Shown: one piece after another, positions 1,771-64,000 of the stretch
Layout: every line of letters starts with the position of its first letter
Position numbering within the stretch: position 1 is the stretch's first letter
Source: Paragordius varius
Taxonomy: Eukaryota; Animalia; Nematomorpha
NCBI GenBank assembly: GCA_964247055.1
Contig: OZ176050.1
Coordinates: forward strand, 11,346,001-11,410,000
Reading direction: 5' to 3'
Length of the DNA stretch: 64,000 bases
The notes under the pieces: model-generated
What the model was told of the DNA's origin: nothing
Databases searched by the model: none
What the model saw: only the letters and a program-made list of their open reading frames with translations
Position numbers and translations under genes: made by a program

Positions 1771-1961
1771 TGTACTACGAAATAATTTCGTGGGTCAGTA
1801 TTTTACGCATTGGATAAACCATTTATGTTATTGGACTGGCAATAAAACTACTGAACATACATTAAAATGCATACTGTATTGTAAAAAATATTTTTTCTAT
1901 GTGAATAATTGTCGACTAAGCCAATGCCCAATCCGTTATAGGGAGCCAGTCTATTTGCTAA

Positions 1962-4982: not shown

Positions 4983-5029
4983 TAATGGTTTAGGTTTCCT
5001 AGTAAAATGTAAAATATTAATCAAGCGCA

Positions 5030-6009
5030 GAATAGGGCTCCACAGGTTGTAAAATACACCACTATAGAATCTCTGACGTTATCATTTGACATAAAAAATA
5101 TGTTTTTTTATATTCCCCCGTATAATTGCAATTTTAGCACTTTCTTTTGATTAGCATTAGGGTAAGGTTCGATGCGTAAAACAGACCATTAGATAATATT
5201 AACAATTTAAAACTAATGTTCAAAACATATAAGTATGGATTTGGAACTTTTGGGTATTTATTTCCCTTTAAAAAAACACTTTCAGTTCTTATTTCAAAAT
5301 CGCCAAATAAAGTTCCACCTTTTGTAAAATTCGCTAACATATAAAGATAAGGTGGATTTGAAGCATTTCTTCGTCCGCGTTGTATGACTATGAAAGATTA
5401 ATATGAATTTCAGGTCTTCTCGAATAATTTTAGTTAAAACTTCTTTGCTTATTAGGGTTTCAACCTCTGTAGCATACGCCATAAAACAATGTGGCTTTAA
5501 AACTTTATATAAATACCTATGAATCTTTACGAATACAATAATTTAAATTACTAGAAAACCTCCCACATCACTTTATTAATTAAATCACCGGATTAAATTG
5601 CACTTGTTGCAGAATAGACCATAAAAAATAACGTAAACCATCGAGATATAAATAATGGTTTTAGATATTAACAGCATATGGGCAAAAACAGTCTCGCGCT
5701 TTCTTTTAATTAGCGGCTGGGTAGGGCACCCTCGTGGATAAGACTTAATATTCCCTGCAATTTTTTAAAAAAGCCTATTAGATATCCTTACTTTAACTGT
5801 AAAGAAAATCCAATTTATAATTGAATTTTTCTGTTTTTAAAAAAATGTGGTAATCTTAATATATCTTTTCATTATGCCAATGAATCAAACAAAAAATAAA
5901 ATAGTTGTATCGAGACCAAAAATTTTTTATATAGTCCGATTGAAAAATCATATATTTGATGTTTCGAGCTAAAATGCGGCCCGCGAAGCCATTTGTGCTG
6001 ACATCCCTG
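5030..6009 (-). mobile_element. Decayed Charlie-type hAT transposon relic
   Basis: The end at 6009 reads CAGGGATGTCAGCACAAATGGCTTCGCGGGCCGCATTT on the minus strand, matching the MITE ends at 14113, 36134 and 40031. ORF 5294-5482 (AYATEVETLISKEVLTKI) loosely resembles the Charlie/GTF2IRD2-type YHTEVRWLSRGKVL motif. Left boundary uncertain. Confidence 0.45.
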
Positions 6010-19000: not shown

Positions 19001-19746
19001 TATGAGCAATTTTCAGTTATATCATCATTGTTATGATTAGAAGAGCAAGCATTTGGTTCCCACAATAAATTATGGAATATACCTTTTTTATCATCAGTAC
19101 TTCGTACGATTGCATTCATAGAATCTTGACCACTGGTTTTAGTTATAAGCCTTGGTTGATTAGTGATCATAGATATATTATCGCCAGGGTTCAATATATT
19201 TGATGACTTTGGAGCTAAATGACTATCATTCATAGATGTTGAGGATGTTAATTTTGATGTATTAACTGATAATGTTTCACCAAAATCTAAAGAAAAACTA
19301 TCTTTCACACAGCCATTAACATTAGTTGTTATCGTATCCAAGCGTGTATTAACGTTTAACGTCATTTCATTATTTTTTCCATTAAGGTTGTGATAAAATA
19401 TTGAAGTATCCATAAGATTTACGTTGTCAACCAAATGATCAAGATTTTTATTGTGACCATTACCATCATTAAGTCGTGTGGTTTGTCCTTGCATATGTTG
19501 TTTTTCATGGCTATCTTTACTATTACCATAATTATTAGAAACCACATCTTTCTCATTGTATGTGGTGTGAGTATTAATGCATGGTATATCATTGCTAATA
19601 GAAAATAATGATATATTTTGGTGACAATTTTTTTGATTATTATTTTTATCATAGTTATCGATTTGTGGTGAAGTTGGAATTGAAGGACAAAAAAAGCCAT
19701 ACCTTTCATTAGTGTTTGAGGATATGCAAATGTTTTGATCATTCAT
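16045..19746 (-). CDS. SoxC: SoxC-group HMG-box transcription factor (Sox4/11/12-like), two exons 19746-17727 and 17441-16045, predicted 1138 aa
   Basis: HMG box at 18540-18313 ([76 protein letters not shown]); WSQIERRKI is diagnostic of group C. A phase-1 intron 17726-17442 (GTACAT...ATATAG, 285 nt) joins the two track ORFs in frame. The C-terminal [16 protein letters not shown] resembles the SoxC SHFEFPDYCTPEVSEM activation motif. Confidence 0.92.
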
Positions 19747-21788
19747 AATGAACGGCAGATTGTTGGAAAAAGTTACTGAATTTTAAAACAAGACAAGAGA
19801 GAGATTGTCTTAAAAATTTCAAACATACGCACCTCACGCACACTCACACACTATACTCTGTGGTAGTTTACCATTTTTATTATTGTCAAAGTGTAATTAT
19901 TAATTAAAATAGAGGTAATGCGTGTGTGTAAGCGTGTTTTTGGTAAATTGGAAATAATTGACAATCAAGGTAGATGAAAAAAACAGGTTAGAGTTTACAA
20001 TAATGAGTAATTGAATGGGTTTGATAGATGTGTAAACAAAAAATGAATAATGGTTTGGTTTTTTCCATAGTTTGATAATAAAAAATTTATGGCAATATTT
20101 ATTTGTTAGCTGTGTTTTTGGAGTGATAAGATTACTATTTCAACATCAGTGAAAAGCGTTTAAATATTTATGCATGTTTGTTTAAACTCAAAATTTGGTG
20201 TTTGATTTATTGGATGATAAAATTTGAGATATACTAATGTTTATTCTGTGGTTTGTTGGTAAGAGTATATGAGTGTTTGGATATGTATGTGATAAGAATA
20301 CCATTTTTAAGCTTTATATTTGCATCATAAACAGATGATATTGTGGAAATAAAGGTTGGAAAATTCGTTATTCCAAAACAAAATAGTTAATATTTTTGAG
20401 AATGAGCACGCCTCTTGAATATTATAATTTGTGCAAACGCGAAACGCTTTGATTGAGCAATCTGTAAAAACAAAAAATAATAAGTTTTATGATTAAATAT
20501 AATCTAGCTTTTCTAATAAAATGGTTTAAAAAAAGGTTAGAGACTTAAAATTACCCTAATAATGTCCAACAAAATATTGCGGCGTTAAACTAAAAATATT
20601 TGATACAAAAACATCCAAATTTAAAGAAAAAAAATTATTAAAAATAATATTTTACCAATTATGTTTGCACTTAATGATGCATAACCGATGATTTAGGAAT
20701 ATTATATAAGGATAAACATAAGAATAAATATTGGAATAATTTAAAAAAAGTGATACTTTAAAAAACTGTGTCGTGTTTAAAGTATTTTAAAGAAATTTAT
20801 AATTTCAGTAATATTTAAAAAATATAGCGATTATTACTAACATCGAAGAGTTACAAGTTCTTCTGCAAAAAATCGTACAAATGAAGTTTATGTCGTATAT
20901 TTATACTTTTATTTTCCTTGCTTTTTTTCTTTTATTTTTCCTTTTTTGTAATGTAATGTGTGTGTGTGTACATATAAAATAACAAGCAAACTCTTTATAT
21001 ATACTAAATCTCATTTATACAATGCAAAAAAACGCAAAAGACACGCAAACATATACATAGTATAGTAGTATAAAAGCTTGATGATGTTAAAATATAAAGA
21101 AAAAAAAAGAAAAGTATAGTATATGGAAAATTTCTGTATACAGATGCATTAAACATTGCAAAACAGAAAATTGTTTATCTTTTGCTTTGATACAACAAAT
21201 TTTTTTAGAGAAAAGATACAGTGTGTCGCAATACAAAAATTTAGATGTTTTTTTTGGAGGTGTGGCTGACTGTGACTGCCTAATTATTACAAAATTTTGA
21301 AAAGAGGGATAGATATTTTAGCGATCGAAAAAAATTCATAAGATTTAAATATTGGTAAACACTTTATATAATCATTTCATATCCCTCTATCTCTATTGTG
21401 TTGATTACTACAATATAAAAAAATTAATTAAATATAGACACGTCATAAAAAATTTTGCTATTAGCATTAAAGTACAATCGATTAATTACATGATAGCTAA
21501 AGGGTAATGTAATTTACCCAACAGAAATGTACAATCATATATTATTATTATTCAAGCTCCCTCCCCTCCTACTTTGTAAAATGTTGTTAAAGCTTTTATA
21601 TTAATTGAATTTTTGTGCCTTGTAATTTATAATATTGGAGCGTACCTTTTCGCTGTGACAATATTAATACAATTAATGGCTTGGTGTTTTAACACGGTAT
21701 ACATAATATTGCAAAGAGAAAATAATGGTGATTGGAGTTGACTAAGTTTAAAATATTTATATTTACTTTTAAACCCTTTTGTTATATA

Positions 21789-46350: not shown

Positions 46351-49300
46351 ATGTTTAAATTGCAGCATCAAATAAAAACTTATTTCAAAACCAATGGACT
46401 AAATATTAAAAGGTTTTACTAATATTTAAATATAGTGATGCTATGGATGTATTAAAACTGCACATTGAAAGGAATAATTTGGAAGCTAGTTTAAATGATG
46501 TACTTAATTCAATTTTGGAATATGTATTAAACCATAGTGAACAAATTAATGCAAGTACCCTTGATAAAAAATTAATAACCCACATTTTGGCGTCACATAA
46601 AACAAAAAAGTATTTAATTTTAATATTTTAGACAAGCTCCTTTAATGGTTGTTGACGCGTTTTCATGCCCTCGCCTTATATATAACGCTGACGATAATAA
46701 AATTCAAAGGTATTGCTATAGGTTTATTTTCCGGGTTATTACAGCACAATTTTAAAGTATTAAGACATGATGCTATAAATTTTACGTTTAATAAATTTTA
46801 AGATACAAATTTTATTCATATCTAAAATTAAACTCAAAAAATATAATTCATAAGAATAACCAAGAAAATAGATTAATTTTGTACATGAATTATATAAAGG
46901 GTAAAATATGTTAAGGTTCTGACTTTTTAATATTTCCCTTTACACGTAATAAGAAATATTTTTTGTTCCATTTATTCCGATTTTTTTAGAAATATAATGA
47001 ATACATAGTAAAAATTGAGTCAACCTTTCAAAAAACAGTATATTTTATTAAAAGAGGCTTTTGCCCAACCCAAAACCTTATGTTCTTCATAAATATTTTC
47101 AAAAACGCAATCATAATAATTGGATAAAGCCTTTAATTAGTCTATTTTTACCATTTTTATATTGGGTGATTGATTATATGTGTTAAATTAATAATATATT
47201 TAAATAGTAATTTTGCTTATGCTTTAGTATGGGTTTTTATATGTCAATAAAATAACCAAATTACTGCTGTCATATTAAAAATAAACTATATATTTCTAAT
47301 ATTAGGTGCTTGAATCTAAAAAATGGTTTTGACGCAAACTCCAAAACAGATTGCTATATCATGCGTTATAACATTCTATTTTATCGGTTATCTCATAGCA
47401 AGCTATTTTCCATTCTACAAGCAAAATCAGTAGCTAATAATGCGAAGAAAATGGATACCAACAAGTTTCAGGTAATATTTTATGTTTATTATACCATTTG
47501 CACTTCAAGAGTGTGTGTCCTTATACACTTTATAATCCTTGAACATTTCAAGTTGGTCCGTTATTCTTGCTTTTTTAACTTTTATCAATCAAATTGTGTA
47601 TCATTCTCTATTTTATAATTTTTAACCTATTTTCTATATTCAATCTTTAAATCGATATCAACTTTTAATCATTAAGAAACTTTATATCATTCCTAAATTA
47701 CACTGCTCAACAAGGTTTTGCACCACCCCATTATTTTTGCATTTTCTGATACCTAATGGCATGGAAAGGCCAAAACAAAAAAGAAAATTGAGGCCACCAA
47801 TAGGATTTTTCCGAAATTTAATTTTTAAATTTGTATTTAATTTAAAAATAACAATCATACCTCGTGTACATATGTTTAAATATTCAAACGAACAAGTCGA
47901 TACAAGTAATATTGCATGAATAACAAAATTCTAGGCATTAAATAAGATACTAAACAAGCTAAGAGCCAAAGTATCAAAAATCTAAAAGGGGCTTATGTAT
48001 AGTGTGATAGATCCAGGCGTCTACACAAGCTCTGCATATCCCCCAAGCGATCCAATTATGCCAGATATGGCAAAGATAACAATAAGTAATCGTAAAGCCC
48101 GATAAGAGAGACTTGCAAGCAAAATCCAGGCAAATTGACATGTCAAATTAACCAATTCACAGAATAAAGTTAGATAAATTCTACAATTAAATTGAATAAA
48201 AAGATTAGGTAAATACAAATGGTCCAATCCCATAATAGTAAATTCTACTAAAAGTGGCTACACAACATCCATCTGAAATTAAAAATACAAAACAACCAAT
48301 AATTTTAAAAAATAAAGTATATCCACTAGGTATAAATAAGGGATTTTTTTAAGAACCAACTCAAGAAAAAAAGCCTAATAAGTACTCGAAAAAACTAACA
48401 AAAAAAAATATAGCTTATCAAAAAGCCGAAGGTTTAAACCATAGAATGCCTTTTTTAGTATTTTTTTAAAAATTTTTTATACGTATTAAAAATTCACTTG
48501 AAAGGAAAAGACTAAATTTTGACGTTTAAGTCTGCACTATTTTTTTCTCTCTGATATTTAAATGACATATCTATATTCAAAAGATAGAGTTTAAAACGCT
48601 TTATTAAATGATATTAAGTTTATAATATAATAACATTTGATTATAAAGTTATATTTAATTTTCTCTCGATTTTCCCTTGTTTTTGAAAAAGTGAAAAACC
48701 TATAATATTTCAAAATTCTGATTGGCGGGATCAAAATTTTTTCACATTCGGTTTTAAAGCACTGAAATTAGTCATAAATTAAAAGTTTGAGTGGTGGTGC
48801 TCGAAAATGTCCAAATTTGTCGAAGTGTTATTTAAAATTTTTATAAGTTTGAAATAAAAAAATATAAGCTTTCTGGGTTATTTCTACAATTTTTCATTAA
48901 AAAATTTATAAGTTAATAATTTTGTTAAAAAGAAACAAAAAAGTGGGTTTTAAATAATTTTATTTTTTATTAAATATATAATAAATAAAGGAAATTAAGT
49001 TAAAAAATAATAAAATTAAAAAATACATGCAAAAATCATGGTTAATTCCAAATTTAAAAATTTTAAGGAACAACTTGAAGTGTTCGAGGACGCTCTTGAA
49101 GTGCAAATGGTATATCACGCACAAAACATCATGTTCTTTTATAAAAATAAATTATATTGCTTTTTAAAACATTAAAAATCCCTTTTTTCGAAATATATAA
49201 ATTTTGTATTTTAATCAAATAAAAATTAATAACCTTTTAAAAATACCCTTTTTCATTTACCCACAGTTACAGATTGAATTGGTAAATTTTAAAAATGTCA

Positions 49301-52300
49301 TATAATAATCAATAAAAAAACCGTTGATATTTTTATACACTTAATTCACATCATCGTAGAAATTCTTATTTTAAATTTCTTTTTTTAATAGTTTAGGTAT
49401 GCTGCCTTTATCGATTTGATTAAAATTATCACAAATTACAGTATTATATAACAATTATATCATTACAAATAAGGTCCGACAGATATGTCAATTTAAGGGG
49501 TCAAGTAGTCCTGAAGAACATCTCATATGTTTAGCCATGCTGACTCGTTTGAAAAACAATATTTTACATTTGGAAGATCCCACTGGACACGTAGAGTTAA
49601 ATACTTCGGAAACAATATCCTTTTTATTTTAGAATTATATTATCATGTTTAAAAATTATTCCTGCAAGTTTTTTTGCATTTTTTTGTTTGGTTTAAGTAA
49701 ATCACTCATTTTTTAATGCTGTACACATCGAGTCAAATTTTTATTTCATATGATACGCATTTGATTTCTTCAATGAATTGTTATTAAAGAGTTAACTGCC
49801 GATTAGGCAATTAACAATTAATTTAGAATTTCATAGTTATAATTATCAAAAAACGTTAAATTAATCACACTATGTTTTTCAGATGGATTTCTATTAGTGA
49901 TCATTGTAGTTGAAATCTGCCCAATTTATTGCGTTTATGGCAGTGACCAAAAAATTAAAAGGGCCGCAAAAAATATTTTTCATGTCTCAAAGGCCGCTCA
50001 CCATATAATTCCGATGAAAATTTCATAGCTGTTTGACACAGATACTATTCAAAATAGGGCCTCGATTTAATACCACTGAATGGTTTACAAAACATGATAA
50101 TCATTATATTTATTTCGCCTTGTTTTTGTTTTAGGAAAAATGGTTTATGTATAGCACTGATTAATAACTATGTATAAAAAATTATTTTCATGCGAATTAA
50201 CTTAATTGTTTCATTTATCATATTTATTTTTTGCCAAGTTATTTTACTTAACTCTAAAATTATGGCAAAATGATATATTAATCATAACAAGTATGGCATG
50301 ATGGTATTTTTTGTGAATCCCAATTTGTATTAGCAGAAGGATACTTTATGGATAATGTATTTCATGCTTTAGCTATTGGTTTTCCGCCACTCGAATCCGA
50401 ATATGAATCCCGGTAAATTGTTTTTCCTATTATATATTTTTTATTGTTTTAATAAGTTTCACGTTTGTTAAATTTTTGTAATTGAGAAACTACATCCAAG
50501 AATGCTTTTTAATTATTCGACATTATCTGTAGGAATTCCATACATATAAAACTATTGTAAATACAGTTCCGCCTATGATGTGTTATGCTAATCATGGATC
50601 TTTCTAGTTTTAACATGCAAATAATTATTTATCTAGGTTGAATTGTCATCATTATCCAAAACAAATAAAATTTGATTTTTTGTCATAATATATAATATAT
50701 TATGAATATAATGTAAATGATATTTAATATAAACGAAAAACTTTTTTTTCCTATGCAATAATCATGATAGGGTCGCATTTTTACTTTACATTAAGTTAAT
50801 GATTAAATTATATATAATTTACAAGTGTGCATTAAAATATAGTAAACATTTGGGTGACACCAATTTTTTTGCCCCCGAACCCGAAATAAATCCCAAAACA
50901 AATTTGTCAAACGAATTGGGAAAAGATGATATCATTGATAATTCGCTTAACACAGATTCAAGCTTTTTGGCCCTCAACGTTGATGAGAAATTGTTGCAAA
51001 TTAATGCTTATTTTGTCATTCTTAGTGATATTTTCTTAGATGATCCAAAAGTATGACTTATAATCGTGCAGTAATGTTTAACTCAAATTATCATTTTTAT
51101 TGGTAACATAATTATATAAATTATAAAATCCACAATTCAAATTTTCACATTTATTTAATATTAAATTATTCATTTATGGTTATTCTCCTTCATTAATTAT
51201 ATCAATTAAATATATGGTGTATAAATGCCAAAAATTTTAGGTAATAGAAAAATTGGATAAATTATTTGCCGGATACAATGAATTGGAACATGTGCCTTAT
51301 GCTTTTATTATGTGTGGTTCATTTTTATCGCACGCAAAATCTCAATCCAACAATCAGGATTCTTGCAAAACATTTTCAAGTATTACTAAAACATTTCGTA
51401 AATATTTTTTATTTTTTGCTCAAAAATTTGTAATAATTGATTTATTATCTAATTAAAATCATACCTTAATGTTTGATTAAGCAATAAATAGATTAGAAAT
51501 GAACGAATAATCTCTGAATTTTATTTTGTTTTACCAGAATACTTCAATTCGTTGGCTCATATGATTTATAATTACAAACAGTTGGCCAAAAGATCTAAAT
51601 TTATATTTATTCCACACTTAACGCAAGATCCTGGAATCAAGGGAATTTTACCAAAGTAATCTTATGTTTATAATTTAATTATTCATAAATACGTATAATA
51701 TACGGCACTATACAGTATGCATTTTAATGTATGTTAAGTAATTTTATTGCCTGCCAAATAACATAAATGGTTTATTAAAAGCGTAAAATACTGACCCACG
51801 AAATTATATCGTAGTACACATATGAAAGAAGATTGACGTGAGAATTAACATAGGCTTTAATTTGATGGATATTTTGTAATGTTAAATTTTGAGAATATTA
51901 TAGCAAATTAGTTAACATTTGTAATATTGTTGTTACGTATTTAGATGCGGAATTATGTGGGTTTTTATCTTTTATAAATTAATAAATAGTAAAATACGTA
52001 TTTTAAGATTTTTTATGTTAATCATTCCTAAAAATAATAAATATTTTTCAACATGCTAAAAACCTGTATTAATCAAATTGGTATTATAATTTTATATAGT
52101 TGTTATTACTAATTAAAATAACACAGGTAAATATATATTTGTGAAAATTTGAGTAGATTTTAGATTTTTGTTTTTTATGTTTAGCATTGTTAATTATTAA
52201 TAATTTTTAAGTATTTCAGACATTTTAAACAGGTAAAAATTGCGGTTTTTAACAAATTTAGTAAAATTTAGTTTTTTTTTGTTTTTTAGGTTTTGCATTT

Positions 52301-55300
52301 TTAATTGTAATTAATTACTAAATATTTTGGACATTTTAATAAATAAAGGTAAAAATTGCGGTTTTTAACAAATTTAGTAAAATTTTTTTTTTTTGTTTTT
52401 TTAGGTTTCGCATTGTTAATTGTAATTAATTACTACATATTTAGGACATTATAATAAATACAGGTAAAAATTGCGGTTTTTAACAAATTTAGTAAAAATT
52501 TAGTATTTTTGTTTTTTAGGTTTTTTGCATTTTTAATTTTAATTAATTACTATAATATTTTGGACCATTTTAATTAATAGAGGTATAAAATGAGGTTGTT
52601 TTTATATTTAGTAAAAATTTAATTTTTTCTTGTTTTTATTTAATATTGTTAATTGTAATTAATTACTACATATTTGGAAATTTTAATAAATACAGGTGAA
52701 AATGGCGGTTTTTAACAAATTTTAAATGTAACATTTTTTGTATTTTGTATCATTGTTATTTACTTAATTGCTAAATTTTTTGGACATTTAAAAAACTGAT
52801 GTAAATTGCGGTTCTTAATAAATTAGTTTTATTCAACCTTGCTAATTTTATCACTATATATTTGTGAAACATTGATATATACAGGTAAAAATTACTATGA
52901 TTTGTGGTTTTTTAAATTTTTTAAAATATTATTTTATTTGTTTTACAATGATAACTATATATATTAAATATAGTTAACATATCTGAGCATGTAAAAATGC
53001 ATGTTACGGTTTTATGTTTGACATTTTATTTTCCAAATCAACTATTTATATTTTAACAAACACCTTATGTCACCAAAGATTGACAATAAGATCAAGATAT
53101 ATACATCTTTTAAAGTATCTGAATATCGCCAAATATAAATAAATTTATTTGAATTATAAATGTATAATTATACAAAATATTCATAATATTATGTTTGAAA
53201 CTAACATTCTTCTTATTGATATTTATACAGGTGATATACGATGCGGTGTGAGTTCATGATGATCATATAGATTGAAGAATAGTATAAGATGCAATTAAAT
53301 GAAAATAATCCTGATTACCATCATTTTCTAGGTAGATTCTAAACTAAAATATAAGATAATTAATATTTTAGAAAATTGATGCCTATTTCTAGAAGAATTT
53401 TCAACATAAATTGGGGGCTAAAACATTCAAAGTTTGAAAGAAAACTAAATAAGGTTGACTTGGCTTTTTAACAACTAAATTTGCAAAAAAATATTTTTTT
53501 CAAGATAAAAAATTCAAAATGATACTTTATGTTTTGTTCGTTCTACCATCCTAAACTATAAATATGAAAAGGCTTATATGATTTCACCATACCAATGACG
53601 TCAAATAGAAAATAGAAACAAATATTTATTTTCAAAGGCTTTGAATGCAACAGCACTCCAAAAACTAAGCAGGCAACACTAACATTGCTTGCTTTGGTGA
53701 AGAATAGTTTTTTATATTTATAGTTTAGGATGGTAGAACGAAAAAAGTATCATTTTTGAATATTTTATCATGAAGAAAATATTTTTTTGCAAATTTAGTT
53801 GTTAAAAAGCCAAGTCAACCTTATTTAGTTCTCTTTCAAACTTTGAATGTTTTAGCCCCTAATTTATGTTGAAAATACTTCTATAATCCAGGTATCAATT
53901 TTCTAATATATTAATTATCTTATATTTTAGTTGATAGAATCTACCTAATTGAAATTTCTGGATTATCTGCATTTAATCTTCAATCTATATGATCATCATG
54001 AACGCACACCGCATCGTATAACAATTCTAAACAAATTACCTGTATTAATATCAATAAGAAGAATGTTAATTTCAAACATAATATAATAAATATTTTTTAT
54101 AATTATACATTTATAATTTAAATAAATTTATTTTATTTGGCGATATTCAGATACTTTAAAAGATGTATACATCCTGATCTTATTTTCATTCTTTGGTGAT
54201 ATAAGGTGTTTTTTAGAATATAAATAGTTGATTTGGAAAATAAAATGTCAAACATAAAACCGTAACATGCATATTTACCTACTCAGATATGATAACTATA
54301 TTTAATATATTAGTTATCAATGTAAAACAAAAAAATAATATTTTACAAAATTTAAAAAACCGCAAATAATAGTAATTTTACCTGTATATTCAATGTTTCA
54401 CAAATATATAGTGATATAGCAAGGTTGAATAAAAGATTTGAAATTCGTTAAAAACCGCCATTTTCACCTGTATTTATTAAATTATTTCCAAATATGTAGT
54501 AGTTAATTACAATTAACAATGCAAAACCTAAAAAACAAAAAAAACTAAATTTTTACTAAATTTGTTAAAAAGCGCAATTTTTACCTGTAATTATTAAAAT
54601 GTCCAAAATATGTAGTAGTTAATTACAATTAACAATGCAAAACCTAAAAAACAAAAAAGACTAAATTTTTACTAAATTTATTAAAAACCGCAAATTTTAC
54701 CTGTATTTATTAACAATGCAAAACCTAAAAAACAAAAAAAAAACTAAATTTTTACCAAATTTGTTAAAAACCGCAATTTTTACCTGTATTTATAATAATG
54801 TCCAAAATATGTAGTAGTTAATTACAATTAACAATGCAAAACCTAAATAACAAAAAAAAAACTAAATTTTTAGGAAATTTATTAAAAACCTCATTTTTTA
54901 CCTGTAATTATTAAAATGTTATGTAGTAGTTAATTACAATTAAAAATGCAAAACCTAAAAAAACAAAAAAAAACAAAATTTTTACTAAATTTGTTAAAAA
55001 CCGCAATTTTTACCTGTATTTATAATAATGTCCAAAATATCTAGTAGTTAATTACAATTAACAATGCAAAACCTAAAAAACAAAAAAAAACTAAATTTTT
55101 ACTAAATTTATTAAAAACCGCATTTTTACCTGTATTTATTATAATGTCCAAAATATGTAGTAATTAATTGCAATTAACAATGCAAAATCTAAAAAACAAA
55201 AAAAAACTAAATTTTTACTAAATTTGTTAAAAAGCGCAATTTTTACCTGTATTTATTATAATGTCCAAAATATGTATAAATTATTTACAACTAACAATGC

Positions 55301-57359
55301 AAAACCTAAAAAACAAAAAAAAACTAAATTTTTAGGAAATTTATTAAAAACCGCAATTTTACCTGTATTTAATATAATGTCCAAAATATTTAGTAATTAA
55401 TTACAATTAACAATGCAAAACCTAAAAAACAAAAAAAAAATTTTTAGGAAATTTATTAAAAACCGCGATTTTTACCTGATAAAAATAATGCAAAACATAA
55501 AAGTCAAAAATCTAAAATCCATTTAAATTTTCACAAATATATATTTACCTGTGTTATTAGTAATAACAAGTATATAAAATTATAATACTAATATTGATTA
55601 ATACAGGTATTTAGCATGTTGAAAAATATTTATTATTAATAAGAATAATTAACATAAAATATCTTAAAATACGTATTTTACTATTTATTAATTTATCAAA
55701 GATAAAAACCCACAAAATTCCGCATCTAAATACGTAACAACAATATTACAAATGTTAACTAATTTGCTATAATATTCTCAAAATTTAACATTACAAAATA
55801 TCCATCAAATTATAAAGCCTATGTTAATTCTCACGTCAATCTTCTTTCATATGTGTACTGCGAAATAATTTCGTGGGTCAGTATTTTACGCTTTTGATAA
55901 ACCATTTATGTTATTTGGCAGGCAATAAAATTACTTAACATACATTAAAATGCATACTGTATTTATATGATTTAAATAAAAGTTAAAAATTTACCCAAAT
56001 CAAGAATTTAACTTTTTTTTATTATCTACGAAAGGCACTCATTACCCAAACATGTTAAAGAAAATTTTGAAAAAGCATGGAAACTTGCGCCATCATCAGC
56101 CAAAAAATTGAAGCACTCAGAAAATTCTGGAGCCACAAACACAGATTCAATCACCAATTATAATTTTGATATGATGGATAAATTTGTCCACTCACATGAT
56201 GTTGAAGAAAACACCGCAAATGAGTAGGCTTTAAATTTCATTTTTGTCATAAAATGTAAATTTAAATTGGTTTTTATAATTTTTTCCCTTATATTTGACG
56301 TTTACAATGTTTAGAGATTCGTATGTTAATGAAAGCGTTGAAAACTATCCCTTTATATTTGGTACAAACCCTTGCCGAATTCAATTTATGTCATATAATA
56401 TCACTGTTTTTCGCTCTGATCTCATGTGTAAAATGTTAAGAAATGCCATACATTTACCCAATCTCAATGATTCTGACTATATCAATAATAATTCAACAAT
56501 CATGTGCGAAACTGGGGATGATATTACATTAAATGATAACATACTAAATGGTTCAATAGCACCCAACGAAGTTAATAAAATGTCAGAACAGGTATTTCGT
56601 TCTTACAAAAAATATTTAATTACTTTTTTAACAATCAATATGTTTACCGTCTGTCCATATAATGCTTTGAAAACATTTATTTTTCTAAGTGAAATGGGTT
56701 TAATTTTAAGTGATAGATATCTATACATTTACTTTTAATACGTAATACTCTTATTAAATTTTTACTGTGCTATATAAAAAGATAAATTTGCATTTGTAAT
56801 ACTATTACTTAACACAGACAAGATTTATTATCACATTATTAGCTGGCCTACACTATTTTAAGTCAATCTCATTTAAATCCTTTGCCACAACTAAGTTGTC
56901 CCATCATCCCAAACTTGGATCATAGTTTGGGTTTATATCCTTTACCCGATTTAGTTATTGTAGCTGATAAATATTTGCCTTACACATACAGTTCAACACA
57001 CCATAATGCGTTTGTGGTGAATCCGGTATGTAATTTACAGATTTTTATTTTTTATTCTTGGAAATTTTTTGCCTTAAATATTTTTTTTTAAAAAAGGTAT
57101 TTTTAGGCAAACATAATTACTTTCAATGATGTTATCATATACTGCTGCCTATTTATATTTTTTTTTAAATTTTTTTGGAATCATACCAAATATATTAAAT
57201 AATTTAATTATCAAAAAGAATTTATGATACTACATATATGTGTCGTTTTTTACATTTTTATTTTAAAATATATTTTAGGGATCCTTTGCCAAAAACCGAT
57301 TCTCATTTAAAGTGTATTATCCATATCAACATCGCATAGAAGATAGTCAAATACCATAA
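46351..57359 (+). CDS. POLE2: DNA polymerase epsilon subunit 2 (B subunit), 13 exons, predicted 651 aa
   Basis: Exons 46351-46412, 46436-46609, 46632-46709, 47306-47471, 49474-49614, 50291(or 50288)-50412, 50843-51050, 51241-51397, 51538-51655, 56035-56223, 56315-56591, 56843-57025, 57279-57359 sum to 1956 nt with all phases compatible. Recognisable motifs: LEDPTGHVEL, FVLAEGYF..FH..AIGFPP, FVILSDIFLD, FIMCGSF, TNPCRIQF, LYPLPDLVIVADKY, NPGSF..NRFSFKVYYP. Confidence 0.93.
46413..46435 (+). other. 23-nt GT-AG intron (POLE2 intron 1)
   Basis: GTTTTACTAATATTTAAATATAG; contains an in-frame TAA; removal gives ...NIK-S-DAMDVL in frame. Confidence 0.75.
46610..46631 (+). other. 22-nt GT-AG intron (POLE2 intron 2)
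   Basis: GTATTTAATTTTAATATTTTAG; retention stops at TAG 46629-46631; removal gives ...KTK-K-QAPLMVVDAF in frame. Confidence 0.78.
47701..48827 (+). mobile_element. Non-autonomous Tc1-like element, copy 3, inside POLE2 intron 4
   Basis: TA-CACTGCTCAACAAGGTTTTGCACC ... GTCCAAATTTGTCGAAGTG; near-identical to the reverse complement of 3850-4982. Confidence 0.85.
49615..50290 (+). other. U12-type (minor spliceosome) intron, POLE2 intron 5
   Basis: 5' splice site ATATCCTTTT is a perfect U12 consensus, placed exactly where homology ends (SET|). A U12-like branch site TTTACTTAAC lies at 50243-50252. No GT-AG solution keeps the frame. 3' end at 50290 or 50287. Confidence 0.8.
52185..52760 (+). repeat. 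~117-bp tandem repeat, about 5 units (left arm)
   Basis: Repeated ...CATTGTTAATTGTAATTAATTACTACATATTTTGGACATT...ACAGGTAAAAATTGCGGTTTTTAACAAATTTAGTAAAA... units. Confidence 0.9.
54440..55480 (-). repeat. ~117-bp tandem repeat, about 9 units (right arm)
   Basis: The CAAAACCTAAA anchor recurs near 54522, 54638, 54719, 54837, 54949, 55068, 55185, 55300 and 55416; spacing 112-119 bp, with one shortened unit. Confidence 0.9.
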
Positions 57360-57615
57360 CGTTAATATATGTGAAACGACAAATAATTATAATTCAAAAA
57401 TTTATTTATCTTATTACAATAAATATAGTATTGTCTAATGAAATAAAAAATAAAGTCAATAATTATTCATGATATTATATAAATAATAATAATATATTCA
57501 TTTGCAACATCCCCAAGTTAAAATAATGTTACAACATAAAAACTGAGCACCGATGATGTAATATTAAAATTTCCCTTTTATACTTTGTCAACGAAACCCC
57601 AAAATTAGTTTGTTT

Positions 57616-60600
57616 CTATACAATATTTTTGGGGCTGTTTTCATAAAAATTGTGTTGTGGTATAGTGCTTGTACAAATAGGTGGTGATAATAAATTGTTT
57701 GTTGGTGTTTCGGAATACGGTGAAAAATTTATTGCCTGATTATATTGATTCGCATTTATATTGCTGGAAAGGTCTGTACTATTTAGATTATATGAGGGTG
57801 TTGTTGGTAGGATATTTGGGTTTGGTGGTAAATAAGTAGTGTTATCTAGAACGTAAATTAATCTTGAGTGAAATATCAAGTTTTTTTAGGAACTATTATT
57901 AAATTCCAAAACTTTATTAGGCTGTTTTCAGCAAATGTTTGTAAAATTAATATTTTAAATGAAACTATACAAAAGCAAATGAAGTTTAATTATAGCATGG
58001 CACATTAAAATTATATAATTGAAATCATGTCTCTAATTTTTTTGCAAACAAGCATTTTAAGGTAAACCTCAAAACACTTGTTTTTAAGATTTTATAATAA
58101 ATTTACATTTATCTTAGGTTAGAAGCAAATCTAATTCATGAATTACCCATTTTAAAAAAGATAAAATCGGAAAAAGTAATATACCAAGATAGGGATACAT
58201 GATAGGCTGATTTATATTATCTGAGGAGAGTGGTTGTTGATAATACATATACTGCATGTTATTTGGGTAATTGATATGATTCATCATGTCTAATGCTCCC
58301 GTGTTAGAGACGACTATTAAATATTTGGAAATGACATGTAAGTACATTTTCTTGGGTATAAATTAAATTAAGGGGATTTAAGAAGTTTTTCAAATAAAAA
58401 GAAAATACTGTCAATTTATGTAATAGACAAAGTTTTTTAATCTTAAAAATATAATTATATGATTGTAGTTGTAAAATATGGTGTTAAAACATAAATCGGT
58501 TAGTTAAACTTTTAAATCAATAATTTAAAACCGTATTCATAGACATTATACGGTAAAAATTAAAGAAATGATTTAACTTGGATTTTACCCTTTTATACAG
58601 TATGAGTAAATATACACTGCTAATTTTTCATTAAATATTGCCAAATAGCAGATACAGATTATTATTGGGTAATAAATAAAACAAGCTATTTACATTTATT
58701 CATACCGTAATTGGTATTCACATTAATTTGGTAACAATAAATTTAGTAAGAAAAATGAGGTTTTTACAAGTATTCGCAAGTATATTAAATATAAATATAT
58801 ATATACATACTGGGTGCAATCGTTGCAATGGTGTTGATATCGCCTTGTTTTAATTGTGACGCATTTAAAGGATCACCTATTATATGGATATTTATATCGT
58901 AACCAAAAAAATATTTTATATAAGCATATATTATGCCTTTTTTAACTCAATATATTCAAAAAAACCATAATTAAACAAATAGAAAAGGTCGAAATGATTA
59001 AACTTTCACACCACTTTTAGTGTTATAAAGTTACCTCCAGGTGGTATGGGTGTGTGTGAATTAGTAGTTAAATGTTCTTGTTGAAGTCGAATTTCTAACA
59101 AAATCTTTGGCAAAAATTTTGCAATTTTAGCCCAAGTCTGTTCTTTCAAGATGGGATCTGATGCGAAAATACCCGAGGTGTCCATAACTAACAACATATT
59201 CTTTAGGGTTTCTGGAATAGCTTCAATCTAGGTTTATTTATTTGAAATTTTAATAATTATTTTTGACATTATAAATAATCCTACACCACAGTAAAAATAT
59301 TTTTATTTCGCTAATTACAGAGTCAATAAACCACATAAATTGCTTTATCTAAAAAACCAGGTGGGTACTAAAATTATAAGTTTTAACCTATTCATTACTT
59401 AGGCTTAGGTTTTTAACCGGTGTAAAAAAAATAACCGAGTCAGTCATGATCGAAATCAGTCATTTATTCACAATAGGAAATACATGTTGTAACTATAAAA
59501 AAATCAATTGCAAACACACTTAATGAATTGCAAATAAGATGGATAACTTTTTTAGAATATCACTAATTTAAAAAATTTAAATTTGACATTAAATTATATT
59601 TTTTTCCTATAACTAATATTTTTATAGGCAGTCACGATCATGATTTCATTTATAATAAAATTTAAATTTAACAATCTATCTATTTTATACCAACATATCT
59701 GCGGACACAGGTGTCGAACTACCCGTTGTTTCATTTTGCATGACATTTTTATCAGTTAACACATCACCACCGGATTTCGCTGTTTGTTGAGCATTGTTAG
59801 ATGGAACATTTGAATTCACGCTAAGCAAACTAGCCTTATAAAATTGTTCCAAATAGCCTAGAATACCCATCCATATAAAGGTAAAAGCTTCATCTTTAAC
59901 GCTTTTTTCGCATGTTTCAGTTTCACCGGTAATACCGTGATCATTAGCTGATATTTCAATAGGTTTTTCTTCTATATGATAAAAAAATTATAGGAAAATA
60001 AGGGTGCTAACCACTCAATATAATTTTATATTAGAAATGAATGTGGTTACCCGAATATAGAATGTTTAGTTTTTGCAAAAATATTTTGCATAATATGGTA
60101 CAAGCCTTGTGTTTACACTCCTCCATATTGCTAGCCATGATTTTCCACTGATTTCCGCCTTGATTAAAAAAAAATGATTGAAAAATAAGTTAAAGTTAAA
60201 TTATTTTATTTACCCCGATTTTTAGCCATTTTCTCGGATTTCAGCGCATGGATATTACGGACATAGAAATCCATTAAGGGAAACAATATCTTTATATTAT
60301 AAATAAACAATATATAAATATATTCATTAAACATCAAAAAATCAATGTTTGTTTTTAAGATTCAATATTATCAAGATAAATAAAAATTGTGCCCAGGTTT
60401 TTACTCGATCATTCCATTGTTTTAATTTTTTTAATTTATCGTCAAAGAACAAAGCAAAATGCATTATATAAACTCACCTTAGTAGAATATACTAAATGTT
60501 ACTAGAATAAAGTTTTACCAATAATATTACATATAAACGTAAGTTAAAAATATAGATATATAACTTGAATAAAGCATTCTTCCCATTCACGCTTTCCGAG

Positions 60601-63600
60601 ATATTCTTGTAAATCCGCAGATAACAAAGCCCTCTGAAGGTAAGAAAGTGATGTTATTTTTACCTGTTTTCGTTTGTCGCAACACATGCGACATAATCCT
60701 AACAACAATAAATGTATATTATAAACAGATTTTGAGTAACTTTCTAGAAAAATCTATTTAATAACATATCAATCAATAAATTTATTACGTTATTAAAATT
60801 AACCAAAACCAAACATATTTTTTACGAATATATGATAAATACCTTTAAAAAGTGGTTTCCAAACGCAAGGCCATATAAAAGATTGGATCCATGTTATTTT
60901 ATCCGGTTCGAGGCTTTGTAGAACGTCCCTCATATACGAAGGCAATCGCGATAAAAGAGATTTATGACTCTCAGAAAGCGTGGGTGCTATTGTGTTAGGC
61001 ATGAGAATTGTCGCATTTTCACGCATAATTATTAACATATCTAGCAGCTAGAGAGCAAAAATAAGTTAGTTTTTAGAATAAAAATATGGGTAAATATTAT
61101 GTTAACGCTATTATTGTAATAAATAAAGTGATATATATTCAGCAATACGGAAATGTATTTTAAATCTAAATTTTTGATTATTGGGATAATAATAACATAT
61201 GTATATTATATATATATTAGAATGTATATTCCTTTAATTTTTATGATTGATAAAATTTACACGTAGAAGAGGCGTAGCTTGCATTTCTGGTGCGCCCTCC
61301 CCATCCATGTATTCCCTTGCATTTTAAAAAAATAATCAAATTCAAACTGTGGTCATGAACACTCATAAATGAATGATTTTTTATGTATTATTCGAAATAA
61401 TAACTTTTAAATACCTATTTGTTTGAAATAAAATTAAAATTTTTTTAAATCCGGCGTCCCTTCAACTATGGCGCCCGGTGTATCAGACCCCCATTATTCC
61501 CCTAGAGACGCATCTGCTCGTAATTACACTAAATAAAATCCAAATTGCAGAATTTACATATATATCATGTACCGAAAATTTTGGATATAGATATAATTTA
61601 AAAGAATTCAATTACCCTTTTATTAATCTAAAAATTATATAATATGTTTTATCACCTGGTAGTAAACTTGTTCATATTTTTCTCCAGAAACATTTTCGAG
61701 TTTAATCGGCGATGCTCTCTCTTTATTTTTGACATATTTTGCATTTGATCCTATGTATCAAAAATTTTGGTAATAAAAAGTTAAGTTATTATTAGCTTTT
61801 GAAAAAATTTTATTTTTATATATATTTTACAATTTATTTAAAAGAAACCAAAAAATATTTACCTTTTCTAGATATTTTGGGTTCATCTGAACTCAAAATA
61901 TCACATTCTGAATCACTTTCTCCGCTGGCATCCTCGGCAGATGTATATTGATTTTTTAAACCCATGGAATGGGGCGATTGAGTTGCTAATAATTATTTGA
62001 AGAGCGTAAAAATATTTTATATATTTTATGAAACACAACTTGGTAAAAAAGCGATCATAGTCAAACTCTTTCGAAACTTCTACTGGAATGACATATTTAT
62101 AAAATTGACTTTTTTCCTCTATGTATTTATGATAAAGAGACAAGAATAATATTTACATTAACAATTATTTAAATTTAGAGCCATATTTTATTAGTTTTTA
62201 CCTAATAAAATATAACCTTTTCTATAACATAAATGAATATTTCCATTGTTTTTGACAAATAGTAGTATAACTATTTCAAATTTATCAATACCTATGGGGT
62301 TATTGTTTTGAATCATTGTTGAAGCATTGGATTTATTTAGATGGTTGTGGCCATAATTTGCATCGACATGATTGGTGGGCAAATGTTCCATTTCATAATA
62401 ATACCAAATTCCCAAAGGTTTGTTAAATATGCTATCAGCTAAAATAGGAAGTATAGGGCACTAATTCAAAATATGAGCCTAAAAATAAAAGGCTAATATT
62501 TTTTATAAGGGTAACAATATTTTAAACCACGATAAATTATGCAACCCGCAAAAAATTTAAAAAAACTACCAAATTTTAAAATAAAAAAATACTACTCACA
62601 AAATATAAGTAAAATTGATATTTCTTAAACAGATATTCCAAATACGTGTCTTCATTTGGAAATGAAATAGTAAAAATTGTTAAAAGATATAGTAACTTAA
62701 TATTTATAAAGTATGTTTGTTTGAAATCTAATAAAATATTTGTAAAATCCCATATATTTTTTAAATCCCGTTTTAAACCCTTTATATTTATCCTTTGGGT
62801 AAGGAATAGAGATGTTAATTTGTAAAACTCAAGTTTTTATTTCACATTTGTATTAATATAGATTAATTGTACAATTTCACAAGAATCATAAAATATGGTT
62901 TTCTTTACAAAAAATATTAGTTTTTTATTTTTGTATTTTATCTTAACAATTTTAATTGATTGTAAATATACATACAATTATCAAGACTATCCTCTGTTGC
63001 AAATGAGGCACGTTTATATGCACACAAAAATTGCGATACAGAACCATTAATTTCTATTCCCAATTTATCGCTTTTGTGTTTATTGGTGGTGTAGGGAAAA
63101 TCACTAACAACATGTTTACTGCCAGTGTGGAATTTTAAGCGTTTCCCTTTTGAAAGCACAAAAAAATATGCTGTTAACGTTAAAAATGGGGTACAAATAT
63201 CGATGTGAAATTAGGTTTTTTACAGGTAAAAAATGAAAACCGATCGATGACCGCTTAAAATACAGTCCTTAACGGTAACCAATCGATTAGTACCACAGAT
63301 GTAATTAAGTGTTTTAAATAAATAAAAACGAAACGGAATTAACCAAAATATTTCGTTTTAAATGTTAAAATATAAATAAAAATGACAAATGTTAATTAAA
63401 TCTTTTTACTTTTTTTTAACCTAGATTGTAAATAAGCGTCAATATTTATTACATTACACAATAAACCCATTAACATTTTTTGAAAAATTATTTTTGAGTA
63501 TAATCAACAGTCAATGCATTAATAACCGGTTAAATCCGGTCTAGAGATCGAAACATTGCATTAATTACCTTTGATGTACGTTTCAACGAAAACTAAAAGT

Positions 63601-63973
63601 GTATGTACGACCAAAAAATAATTGTTGGTTGTTAGTGTGTGTGTCACGATAAACGTCAATATTTCGCAACATTTCGTAAATGAAAAAACGTGATGCGGTT
63701 TAAGTCTAACGCGGACCGTATTAAAATCACTGGGTTGGCGATTTTGAAAATCGGGTGTACCAATGCGTTGAATTACTTGCTGATTAATAAATGATGATGG
63801 GAAGGAATAAGGTTCAAGTTGATTCTAAAATAAATTTAACAAATTTATTATAATTAAAAGTTTAGTAATATACAACTATATAGAAGGGAACAATAGGGTT
63901 GAACAATAATTTAATACCTTTTCCACGAAATACCATTCATCTCTTTTGCTATTATCCTCGGATGATGGTTGTG
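57616..63973 (-). CDS. GBF1: Golgi brefeldin A-resistant Arf guanine-nucleotide exchange factor 1, 3' part (5' exons outside window)
   Basis: Exons (minus): 63973-63918, 63824-63569, 63170-62976, 62438-~62201, ~61985-61863, 61750-61656, 61047-60843, 60698-60565, 60289-60214, 60158-60051, 59971-59691, 59227-59035, 58876-58811, 58313-58185, 57845-57616. Motifs match the GBF1 HDS region: KCCEILTFIV, LLVFVET, Q|LLDML, W.PLFKGLCRMCCDKRKQVKITSLSYLQRALLSADL...EWEECF, ILFPLM, ACTILCKIFLQ, EAIPETLKNMLLVMDT, TWAKIAKFLP. Boundaries between 62438 and 61985 are uncertain. Confidence 0.9.
61268..61516. mobile_element. Degenerate MITE with CAGGGGCGTAGC-type termini, in a GBF1 intron
   Basis: AGAGGCGTAGCTTG ... 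CCCCTAGAGACGCATCTG, with GC-rich subtermini (GGCGCCC); flanks CACGTAGA and CTCGTAAT are only partly similar. Confidence 0.45.
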
Positions 63974-64000
63974 CTATAAAAATTGAATATAAATAAACAT

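What the first reader, a model, noticed from the sequence alone, without database searches (positions are those of the whole stretch)
46413..46435. 23-nt spliceosomal intron in an animal-type gene
POLE2 exon 1 (MFKLQHQIKTYFKTNGLNIK, matching the human N-terminus ...SAFKLRGLLLRG) runs into TAA unless GTTTTACTAATATTTAAATATAG is removed; removal restores the frame exactly. From memory, human POLE2 has a phase-2 intron at this same codon. Introns this short are established for ciliates such as Paramecium, chlorarachniophyte nucleomorphs and dicyemids, but are below the usual bilaterian minimum. Every other intron I mapped here, apart from intron 2, is 79 nt or longer. A TACTAAT branch-like motif sits only ~5 nt from the 5' end. 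This may be an undescribed class of ultrashort introns coexisting with normal and multi-kb introns.
Basis: partly seen in the sequence, partly recalled or inferred. Interest (0 to 1): 0.8.

Follow-up and report, generated by a model that had tools for sequence, protein, structure and literature searches.

The report
23-base intron in hairworm POLE2
The DNA-polymerase-epsilon subunit 2 gene of what is very probably a horsehair worm reads correctly only if segments of 23 and 22 bases are spliced out where other animals carry introns of 46 to 1,158 bases, which would add a third animal group to the two published with introns under 30 bases; RNA proof is still missing.

Summary
Window 46413-46435 is a 23-nt GT..AG segment. 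Removing it joins a 20-codon ATG exon to exon 2 through a rebuilt Ser codon; left in, the frame stops at TAA.

I rate it a real U2-type spliceosomal intron at about 0.9.
- A profile built from 21 POLE2 N-termini ranks exons 3, 2 and 1 as the top three of 5,075 six-frame segments of the window. Exon 1 ends at profile node 21 and exon 2 starts at node 23.
- A quail, an acanthocephalan, an ostracod and a nematode all have a phase-2 intron in that same codon (1,158, 52, 67 and 46 nt).
- The neighbouring 22-nt segment (46610-46631) also sits at a conserved intron position.
- I mapped 21 more 21-31 nt GT..AG introns in 11 other genes of this genome. They rebuild invariant GTPase motifs.
- U1, U2 and U6atac snRNAs look canonical.
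- The mitochondrial contig has the hairpin palindromes described for Nematomorpha and uses the invertebrate code.

No RNA or raw reads could be obtained, so splicing is inferred, not shown. This scan has already reported the same intron class elsewhere in this genome. Introns under 30 nt are published for dicyemids and myxobolids, and I found no report for hairworms. Verdict: a new member of a known kind.

The parts
46351..46412 (+). POLE2 exon 1: ATG, 20 codons, then the first two bases (AG) of a split Ser codon
   Evidence: Matches profile nodes 4-21 of a POLE2 N-terminal HMM.
46413..46435 (+). The finding: a 23-nt GT..AG micro-intron, phase 2, 13% G+C. It holds TACTAAT at positions 5-11 and an AAA run 5-7 nt before the AG.
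   Evidence: Unique GT/AG solution. Removal places profile node 22 on the rebuilt AG|T codon. Orthologous phase-2 introns exist in four other animals.
46436..46609 (+). POLE2 exon 2 (T of the Ser codon, then DAMDVL...HKTK, then AA of a split codon)
   Evidence: Profile nodes 22-68, E 0.006 against the whole window's six-frame segments.
46610..46631 (+). Second micro-intron, 22 nt, GT..AG, phase 2, 9% G+C
   Evidence: The split codon falls at profile node 82, where Steinernema (49 nt) and Neoechinorhynchus (56 nt) have phase-2 introns.
46632..46709 (+). POLE2 exon 3 (QAPLMVVDAFSCPRLIYNADDNKIQ)
   Evidence: Profile nodes 86-108, E 0.001. Best hit in the window.
46710..47305 (+). Intron 3, 596 nt, ordinary GT..AG
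47306..47471 (+). POLE2 exon 4
49474..49614 (+). POLE2 exon 5 (after a 2,002-nt intron that holds a repeat copy)
49615..50290 (+). Intron 5. The donor reads ATATCCTTT (U12-type consensus) and there is a branch-like ACTTAAC at 50246-50252. The 3' end is not resolved.
   Evidence: A U6atac gene is present in the genome.
50291..57359 (+). Rest of POLE2. Exons: 50291-50412, 50843-51050, 51241-51379, 51538-51655, 56315-56591, 56843-57025, 57279-57359 (stop TAA at 57357-57359). Introns: 430, 190, 158, 4659, 251 and 253 nt.
   Evidence: PF04042 DNA_pol_E_B matches the pieces 51241-51384, 56328-56606 and 56843-57016.

Best explanation
Window 46413-46435 is a genuine U2-type (GT-AG) spliceosomal intron of 23 nt in the POLE2 gene of a nematomorph (horsehair worm).

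Shown from sequence: the exact boundaries, the frame logic, the profile continuity across the junction, and the conserved position and phase in other animals. It is the shrunken orthologue of an ancient phase-2 bilaterian intron. After removal the codon AG|U reads Ser, and exon 1 supplies the conserved first helix of the Dpoe2NT domain.

Inferred: the pre-mRNA is recognised across the intron (intron definition) by the ordinary major spliceosome, whose U1 5' end and U2 branch-binding box are canonical in this genome. The 5' site is AAG|GUUUUA. The branch adenosine is either A10 of UACUAAU (13 nt before the 3' site) or one of the As at positions 16-18. The 3' site is AUAG|U, with no real polypyrimidine tract.

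The intron belongs to a genome-wide class of 21-31 nt introns that sit beside 46-86 nt and kb-sized introns, often in the same gene.
For: 1. Unique GT..AG solution that removes an in-frame TAA and restores the frame.
2. A POLE2 N-terminal HMM (21 homologues) was searched against all 5,075 stop-free six-frame segments of the window. The top three hits are exon 3 (E 0.001), exon 2 (E 0.006) and exon 1 (E 0.64, conditional 3.8e-4; next hit 9.2). Exon 1 ends at node 21, the split Ser is node 22, and exon 2 starts at node 23.
3. A phase-2 intron lies in the node-22 codon in Callipepla squamata (1,158 nt), Neoechinorhynchus agilis (52 nt), Notodromas monacha (67 nt) and Steinernema hermaphroditum (46 nt). 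The 22-nt neighbour matches phase-2 introns at node 82 in Neoechinorhynchus and Steinernema.
4. I mapped 21 further 21-31 nt GT..AG introns in 11 other genes of the same genome. They rebuild invariant motifs (GKS-SLL, TIG-xDF, W-DTAG, Y-YRG, KE-ICI). At the same position in paralogues the lengths differ by non-multiples of 3 (25 vs 26, 22 vs 29, 21 vs 27).
5. Ras-family intron sizes fall into three groups: about 15 at 21-31 nt, 8 at 46-86 nt, 17 at 250-3,200 nt, and none at 32-45 nt.
6. U2 carries GTAGTA, U1 carries ACTTACCTG, and U6atac is present.
7. The POLE2 5' region is single-copy in the 110.6-Mb assembly.
Against: The raw reads behind the assembly were not inspected either.

Exon 1 alone is only a weak profile hit (8 bits). 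Exons 1 and 2 alone give no Pfam Dpoe2NT hit and no PDB POLE2 hit.

My annotation-free ORF-bridging test showed no GT..AG excess at 18-34 nt over control dinucleotides, but its background was too high to detect a class of this density.

The 5' splice site pairs with U1 at only about 4 positions. A branch point 9 nt from the 5' site would be sterically unusual.
Confidence: 0.9

Rival explanations
1. The 23 nt are not removed. Exon 1 is an upstream ORF or 5' UTR, and POLE2 translation starts at ATG 46443 (MDVLKL...).
For: ATG 46443 is in frame with exon 2. Exon 1 alone scores only 8 bits against the profile. No RNA data are available.
Against: The protein would lack the conserved first helix (I..xFK..GL.[IL]K) that all 21 homologues have, and which exon 1 encodes immediately upstream in the correct register. 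The interruption lies exactly at an intron position and phase shared by four other animals. The 22-nt segment downstream cannot be avoided by any alternative start.
Confidence: 0.04
2. Assembly artefact: a longer intron was collapsed to 23 nt, or a short indel was introduced by long-read errors.
For: Raw reads could not be inspected. The region is AT-rich.
Against: A collapse would have to leave exact GT..AG ends and the correct phase, both here and at 46610-46631. The same would have to happen at 21 other sites on five chromosome-scale contigs, all within 21-31 nt. The segment contains no long homopolymer run.
Confidence: 0.02
3. The segments are removed from DNA rather than RNA (somatic excision of short internal eliminated sequences, as in ciliates), or POLE2 here is a decaying pseudogene with frameshifting insertions.
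For: The sizes (21-31 nt) resemble Paramecium internal eliminated sequences. Programmed DNA elimination exists in some nematodes (general knowledge).
Against: The boundaries are GT..AG, not TA..TA. The positions and phases are those of orthologous spliceosomal introns. All 12 exons are otherwise open, and three give family matches. As the only POLE2 5' region found in the genome, the gene is unlikely to be dead.
Confidence: 0.02

Closest known systems
Ultra-short introns of myxobolid Myxozoa (Henneguya salminicola, Thelohanellus kitauei, Myxobolus; Hadjez et al. 2026, PMC13644364)
   Same: Animal GT..AG introns of about 20-30 nt at conserved positions between conserved exons. The 5' signal is reduced to about GTA, there are A residues shortly before the AG, there is little or no polypyrimidine tract, U2 is canonical, short introns cluster within genes, and the host is a parasite (searches compared).
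   Different: In myxobolids the median of all introns is 22-27 nt. Here the class is roughly a third of introns in my small sample. It shares genes with introns of 150 nt to 4.7 kb, in a bilaterian (ecdysozoan) with the invertebrate mitochondrial code. Splicing in myxobolids was checked with Iso-Seq; here it was not.
Introns of Dicyema japonicum (Dicyemida; cited in PMC13644364)
   Same: A bilaterian parasite with introns under 30 nt and reduced splice-site motifs.
   Different: In dicyemids the short size is the genome-wide norm in a compact genome. This genome is 110.6 Mb, repeat-rich, and keeps many kb-sized introns.
Tiny introns of ciliates (Paramecium about 25 nt, Nyctotherus, Stentor 15-16 nt) and of chlorarachniophyte nucleomorphs
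   Same: The size range, AT-richness, GT..AG ends and inferred intron-definition splicing (abstracts; nucleomorphs from general knowledge).
   Different: Those are protists whose introns are nearly all tiny. Here the code is standard and the introns are shrunken orthologues of ordinary animal introns.
Human 'ultra-short' introns (43-65 nt; PMC4463651)
   Same: Rare, very short U2-type introns coexisting with very long ones in the same genome.
   Different: The human minimum is about twice as long. The 21-31 nt class here is a separate mode, with no introns of 32-45 nt in my sample.

Membership tests
U2-type (GT-AG) spliceosomal intron | GT at the 5' end and AG at the 3' end | tested here: met
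   46413-14 is GT and 46434-35 is AG. There is no alternative GT or AG inside.
U2-type (GT-AG) spliceosomal intron | Removal restores a continuous, homologous reading frame | tested here: met
   Profile nodes 21, 22 and 23 fall on the last codon of exon 1, the rebuilt Ser codon and the first codon of exon 2.
U2-type (GT-AG) spliceosomal intron | Position and phase shared with introns of orthologous genes | tested here: met
   Phase 2 at node 22 in a quail, an acanthocephalan, an ostracod and a nematode.
U2-type (GT-AG) spliceosomal intron | Absent from mature mRNA; lariat formed at a branch adenosine | not testable with these tools
No same-species transcript protein was found.
U2-type (GT-AG) spliceosomal intron | Major-spliceosome snRNAs with intact recognition boxes in the genome | tested here: met
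   U2 at 177.7 bits with GTAGTA; U1 at 124.3 bits with ACTTACCTG.
Animal ultra-short (<30 nt) intron class (Dicyemida, Myxobolidae) | Length under 30 nt, recurring in many genes | tested here: met
   23 and 22 nt here. 21 more of 21-31 nt (18 under 30) in 11 other genes.
Animal ultra-short (<30 nt) intron class (Dicyemida, Myxobolidae) | The short size is the genome-wide median | tested here: not met
   Only about 15 of about 40 Ras-family introns are micro, and 9 of 11 POLE2 introns are 158 nt to 4.7 kb. The sample is small.
Animal ultra-short (<30 nt) intron class (Dicyemida, Myxobolidae) | Reduced splice-site motifs (about GTa ... AG) and an A run before the AG | tested here: inconclusive
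   Of the first 20 micro-introns listed, 14 start GTA and 6 GTT; 16 end TAG and 4 AAG. TAAT- or AAAT-like motifs lie 5-14 nt before the AG, but at about 85% A+T this is not distinguishable from chance.
U12-type (minor) intron | Donor /[AG]TATCCTT and branch TCCTTAAC close to the 3' end | tested here: not met
   The donor is GTTTTACT. Intron 5 of the same gene, by contrast, does have ATATCCTTT.
Ciliate-type internal eliminated sequence | TA..TA boundaries and removal from somatic DNA | tested here: not met
   The boundaries are GT..AG. Somatic DNA could not be tested.
POLE2 (DNA polymerase epsilon subunit 2 / Dpb2) | DNA_pol_E_B domain plus the N-terminal Dpoe2NT helical domain | tested here: met
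   PF04042 matches three exons (E 7e-5 to 2e-6, each just under the whole-protein cut-off because single exons were scanned). An N-terminal profile of homologues that carry PF12213 hits exons 1-3. The nearest homologues are named DNA polymerase epsilon subunit 2.
Nematomorpha (source organism) | Mitochondrial genome crowded with long perfect hairpin palindromes, and the invertebrate mitochondrial code | tested here: met
   Contig C44 is 15,693 bp. COX1 uses TGA for Trp and AGR at conserved Ser positions. There are 57 and 20 inverted-repeat pairs in its two parts, with arms up to 208 nt, 100% complementary and 0 nt apart. This is the feature described for Nematomorpha in PMC6649704 (abstract). 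I did not test whether the palindromes lie inside genes.

The most novel reading that the evidence does not exclude
Horsehair worms (Nematomorpha) are a third, independent animal lineage, and the first ecdysozoan and first large-bodied one, with a discrete class of 21-31 nt introns. Here the class is not the product of wholesale genome compaction. It is a separate size mode kept beside 46-86 nt and kb-sized introns, even within one gene.

Common aligners and gene predictors set minimum intron lengths near or above this size. The class would then be systematically mis-annotated, and part of the low BUSCO scores and the reported 'rampant gene loss' in hairworm genomes would be an artefact.
Probability: 0.4. 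Interest if true: 0.75.

Novelty: new member of a known kind. Interest (0 to 1): 0.62.

Why it matters
Until 2026, introns under about 30 nt were thought to be absent from animals. The one comparative study I found lists only myxobolid cnidarians and dicyemids, and links the trait to parasitism and tiny bodies (PMC13644364).

A hairworm would add a third lineage: parasitic, but macroscopic and tissue-rich, with a repeat-rich 110-Mb genome. Here tiny, short and kb-sized introns share the same genes. That separates intron miniaturisation from genome compaction. It also offers a system in which one spliceosome must handle 22-nt and 4.7-kb introns in a single transcript.

There is a practical side. 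Hairworm gene sets built with default minimum-intron settings may be broken at such sites. The Gordionus montsenyensis assembly, for example, reports 71.6% BUSCO completeness. Whether micro-introns contribute to that figure is my inference and was not tested.

Tried and rejected
2. Single-exon searches. Exon 1 and exon 2 gave no Pfam Dpoe2NT hit and no PDB POLE2 hit at E up to 10. The N-terminal domain is too divergent for single exons, so I used a home-built profile instead.
3. Same-species transcript proteins. The representative search with the C-terminal exon gave at most 65% identity over the matched stretch. A RhoA-like exon search gave at most 88%. Neither returned a protein from this species.
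4. An annotation-free test on 264 kb. I counted GT..AG segments that bridge two open frames and compared them with five control dinucleotide pairs. There was no excess at 18-34 nt and about a 2-fold excess at 45-120 nt. The background from chance ORFs was too high, so I rejected it as a test; it is not evidence against the class.
5. The actin and kinase Pfam samples added little. Most stops inside kinase matches were alignment run-offs into introns.
6. Intronless Rap1-like and Di-Ras-like genes were checked as possible retrocopies of micro-intron genes. They are distinct paralogues.
7. A myxozoan or dicyemid origin was considered. The mitochondrial code and the hairpin-rich 15.7-kb mitochondrial contig argue against a myxozoan and for a nematomorph; a dicyemid was not tested directly.
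9. I did not fetch human or other mammalian POLE2 loci. A bird stands in for vertebrates.

Full report
THE OBSERVATION. On the + strand an ATG at 46351 opens 20 codons (MFKLQHQIKTYFKTNGLNIK), followed by AG at 46411-12. The next 23 bases, 46413-46435, start with GT and end with AG and contain no other GT or AG. Read through, the frame runs AAA AGG TTT TAC TAA and stops. With the 23 bases removed, AG plus T at 46436 gives Ser and the frame continues DAMDVLKLHIE. A second segment of 22 nt (46610-46631) behaves the same way, also in phase 2.

THE GENE. Three downstream exons match Pfam PF04042 DNA_pol_E_B. A search of 1.84 billion representative proteins with the exon at 56843-57016 returned 266 relatives. 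Those I looked up are named DNA polymerase epsilon subunit 2 in Notodromas, Steinernema, Tigriopus, Trichuris, Callipepla and others. Most of those I fetched carry Dpoe2NT plus DNA_pol_E_B. My exon map has 12 exons from 46351 to 57359 and 11 introns of 23, 22, 596, 2002, 676, 430, 190, 158, 4659, 251 and 253 nt. Everything was searched exon by exon, by reference.

IS EXON 1 REALLY JOINED TO EXON 2? On their own, exons 1 and 2 are too divergent for Pfam or PDB. I therefore aligned the N-termini of 21 full-length homologues, built an HMM, and searched every stop-free six-frame segment of the window (5,075 segments, 104,186 residues) with filters off.
- The three best hits are the segments holding exon 3 (nodes 86-108, E 0.001), exon 2 (nodes 22-68, E 0.006) and exon 1 (nodes 4-21, E 0.64, conditional 3.8e-4). 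The fourth hit has E 9.2.
- hmmalign puts the last full codon of exon 1 on node 21 and the first full codon of exon 2 on node 23. Node 22 is left for the rebuilt Ser codon.
- Homologues read, for example, FKMYGFTLK-S-EAAQDL. This gene reads FKTNGLNIK-S-DAMDVL. The 23-nt removal is therefore exact to the base.

CONSERVED INTRON POSITION. I fetched annotated POLE2 loci and mapped each protein back onto its DNA. A phase-2 intron splits the codon at node 22 in four species:

| Species | Group | Intron length |
|---|---|---|
| Callipepla squamata | quail | 1,158 nt |
| Neoechinorhynchus agilis | acanthocephalan | 52 nt |
| Notodromas monacha | ostracod | 67 nt |
| Steinernema hermaphroditum | nematode | 46 nt |

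The 22-nt segment splits the codon at node 82 in phase 2. Neoechinorhynchus (56 nt) and Steinernema (49 nt) have introns at that same place. Both micro-introns are thus shrunken orthologues of old bilaterian introns.

A CLASS, NOT A ONE-OFF. A Pfam Ras search of the window's own 110.6-Mb assembly gave exon-by-exon matches. Where neighbouring matches had consecutive profile coordinates, I read the DNA.
- This gave 18 GT..AG introns of 21-31 nt in eight small-GTPase genes, including a Rab-like gene with five (21, 21, 22, 22, 22) and another with four (27, 29, 28, 23).
- One proteasome subunit has a 27-nt intron, a Chk1-like kinase a 24-nt one and a CDK-like kinase a 30-nt one.
- Each removal rebuilds an invariant motif (GKS-SLL, TIG-xDF, W-DTAG, Y-YRG).
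- Paralogues have introns at the same site with lengths differing by non-multiples of three (25 vs 26, 22 vs 29, 21 vs 27). Coding read-through cannot explain that.
- Estimated Ras-family intron sizes fall into three groups: about 15 at 21-31 nt, 8 at 46-86 nt, 17 at 250-3,200 nt, and none at 32-45 nt.
- Micro-introns cluster by gene, as reported for myxobolids.
- They are about 85% A+T. Of the first 20 listed, 14 start GTA and 6 GTT; 16 end TAG and 4 AAG.

THE MACHINERY. The genome has U2 genes with the canonical branch-binding GTAGTA box, U1 genes with ACTTACCTG, and a U6atac gene with AAGGAGAGA. U12 was not found, but only 42 of about 10,000 candidates were scored, so this says nothing about absence. 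Nothing suggests an unusual spliceosome. The mechanism I propose is ordinary U2-type splicing by intron definition, and it is inferred. The branch point could be A10 in UACUAAU or an A at positions 16-18.

THE ORGANISM. Earlier notes of this scan called the genome hairworm-like, and I tested that. Contig C44 (15,693 bp) carries COX1 with TGA as Trp and AGR at conserved Ser positions, which is the invertebrate mitochondrial code and not the cnidarian one. The contig is packed with perfect hairpin palindromes, with arms up to 208 nt and no spacer. That is the peculiarity described for Nematomorpha mitochondrial genomes (PMC6649704). The nuclear G+C of about 25% is close to the 26.9% of Gordionus montsenyensis.

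WHAT IS MISSING. No same-species transcript-derived protein turned up. The raw reads behind the assembly were not checked either. An annotation-free ORF-bridging test was too noisy to detect the class.

RIVALS. Three alternatives each get a few per cent: translation starting at ATG 46443 with exon 1 as an upstream ORF, an assembly collapse, and DNA-level excision or a pseudogene. All three fail to explain the exact profile continuity, the conserved position and phase, the unavoidable 22-nt neighbour, and the 21 parallel cases.

COMPARISON AND NOVELTY. Introns under 30 nt in animals are published for Dicyemida and, since September 2026, for Myxobolidae. That paper surveyed 51 animal genomes, names no nematomorph in its main text, and predicts that more lineages will be found. 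My paper searches found nothing linking hairworms to intron size. Subscription-only papers are outside that library. The difference from the two published groups is that here the tiny size is one mode among three, not the genome-wide median. This scan has already reported the same class at many other places in this genome, also without RNA. What this report adds is the POLE2 case, with exact profile continuity and four-species positional conservation, an independent GTPase sample, and the mitochondrial test of the organism.

VERDICT. It is a new member of a known kind. Confidence that the 23 nt are a real spliced intron is about 0.9.

Noticed in passing
window 49615-50290 (POLE2 intron 5): The donor reads ATATCCTTT, the U12-type consensus, exactly where exon 5 must end. 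A branch-like ACTTAAC lies at 50246-50252. The only frame-compatible 3' ends (AA at 50289-90, AC at 50287-88, AG at 50290-91) lie 36-40 nt further on, so the acceptor is unresolved. A U6atac gene exists at G000:C2:4857045-4857187 (66 bits). A minor spliceosome in a nematomorph would contrast with its loss in nematodes (the nematode loss is from general knowledge).
   Followed up: partly
G000:C3:257000-530000 and other contigs: 46 U2 snRNA matches, at least 35 over the Rfam cut-off, many of them divergent copies clustered in about 270 kb of contig C3. There are also 17 U1 matches, 16 of them on contig C6. Whether the variant U2 copies are expressed or related to micro-intron splicing is unknown.
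   Followed up: no
G000:C44 (L042, L043): A mitochondrial contig of 15,693 bp with dozens of perfect hairpin palindromes (arms up to 208 nt, 0 nt apart) and a tandem array of a roughly 72-nt hairpin unit at about 6750-7450.
   Followed up: partly
window 1751-2077 (+), 4740-5078 (-), 47626-47916 (+): Three copies of one repeat, whose open frame reads ...LHFLIPNGMERPKQKRKLRPPIGFF.... One copy sits inside the 2-kb POLE2 intron 4. It is probably a transposon family.
   Followed up: no
window 16048-19782 (-): Two large open frames (486 and 691 codons, 34-36% G+C against 25% around them). The second holds an HMG box of Sox type ([10 protein letters not shown]...YKYRPRKK), so this is a Sox-family transcription factor gene.
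   Followed up: no
window 52200-55500 (inside POLE2 intron 9, 51656-56314): Arrays of roughly 115-nt repeat units on both strands (open frames reading ...KTKFLLNLLKTAIFTCIYNNVQN...).
   Followed up: no
L030 (G000:C5:8097580-8097987, -) and L029 (G000:C2:7965188-7965373, -): Some micro-introns are multiples of three and contain no stop codon (24 nt in a RhoA-like gene, 27 nt in a Rab-like gene). ORF scans cannot see them, and if retained they would insert 8-9 residues into conserved GTPase loops.
   Followed up: partly
window 57600-64000 (-): The 3' part of a large gene whose frames include ...EAIPETLKNMLLVMDTSGIF..., a GBF1/BIG-type Sec7 exchange factor by eye.
   Followed up: no
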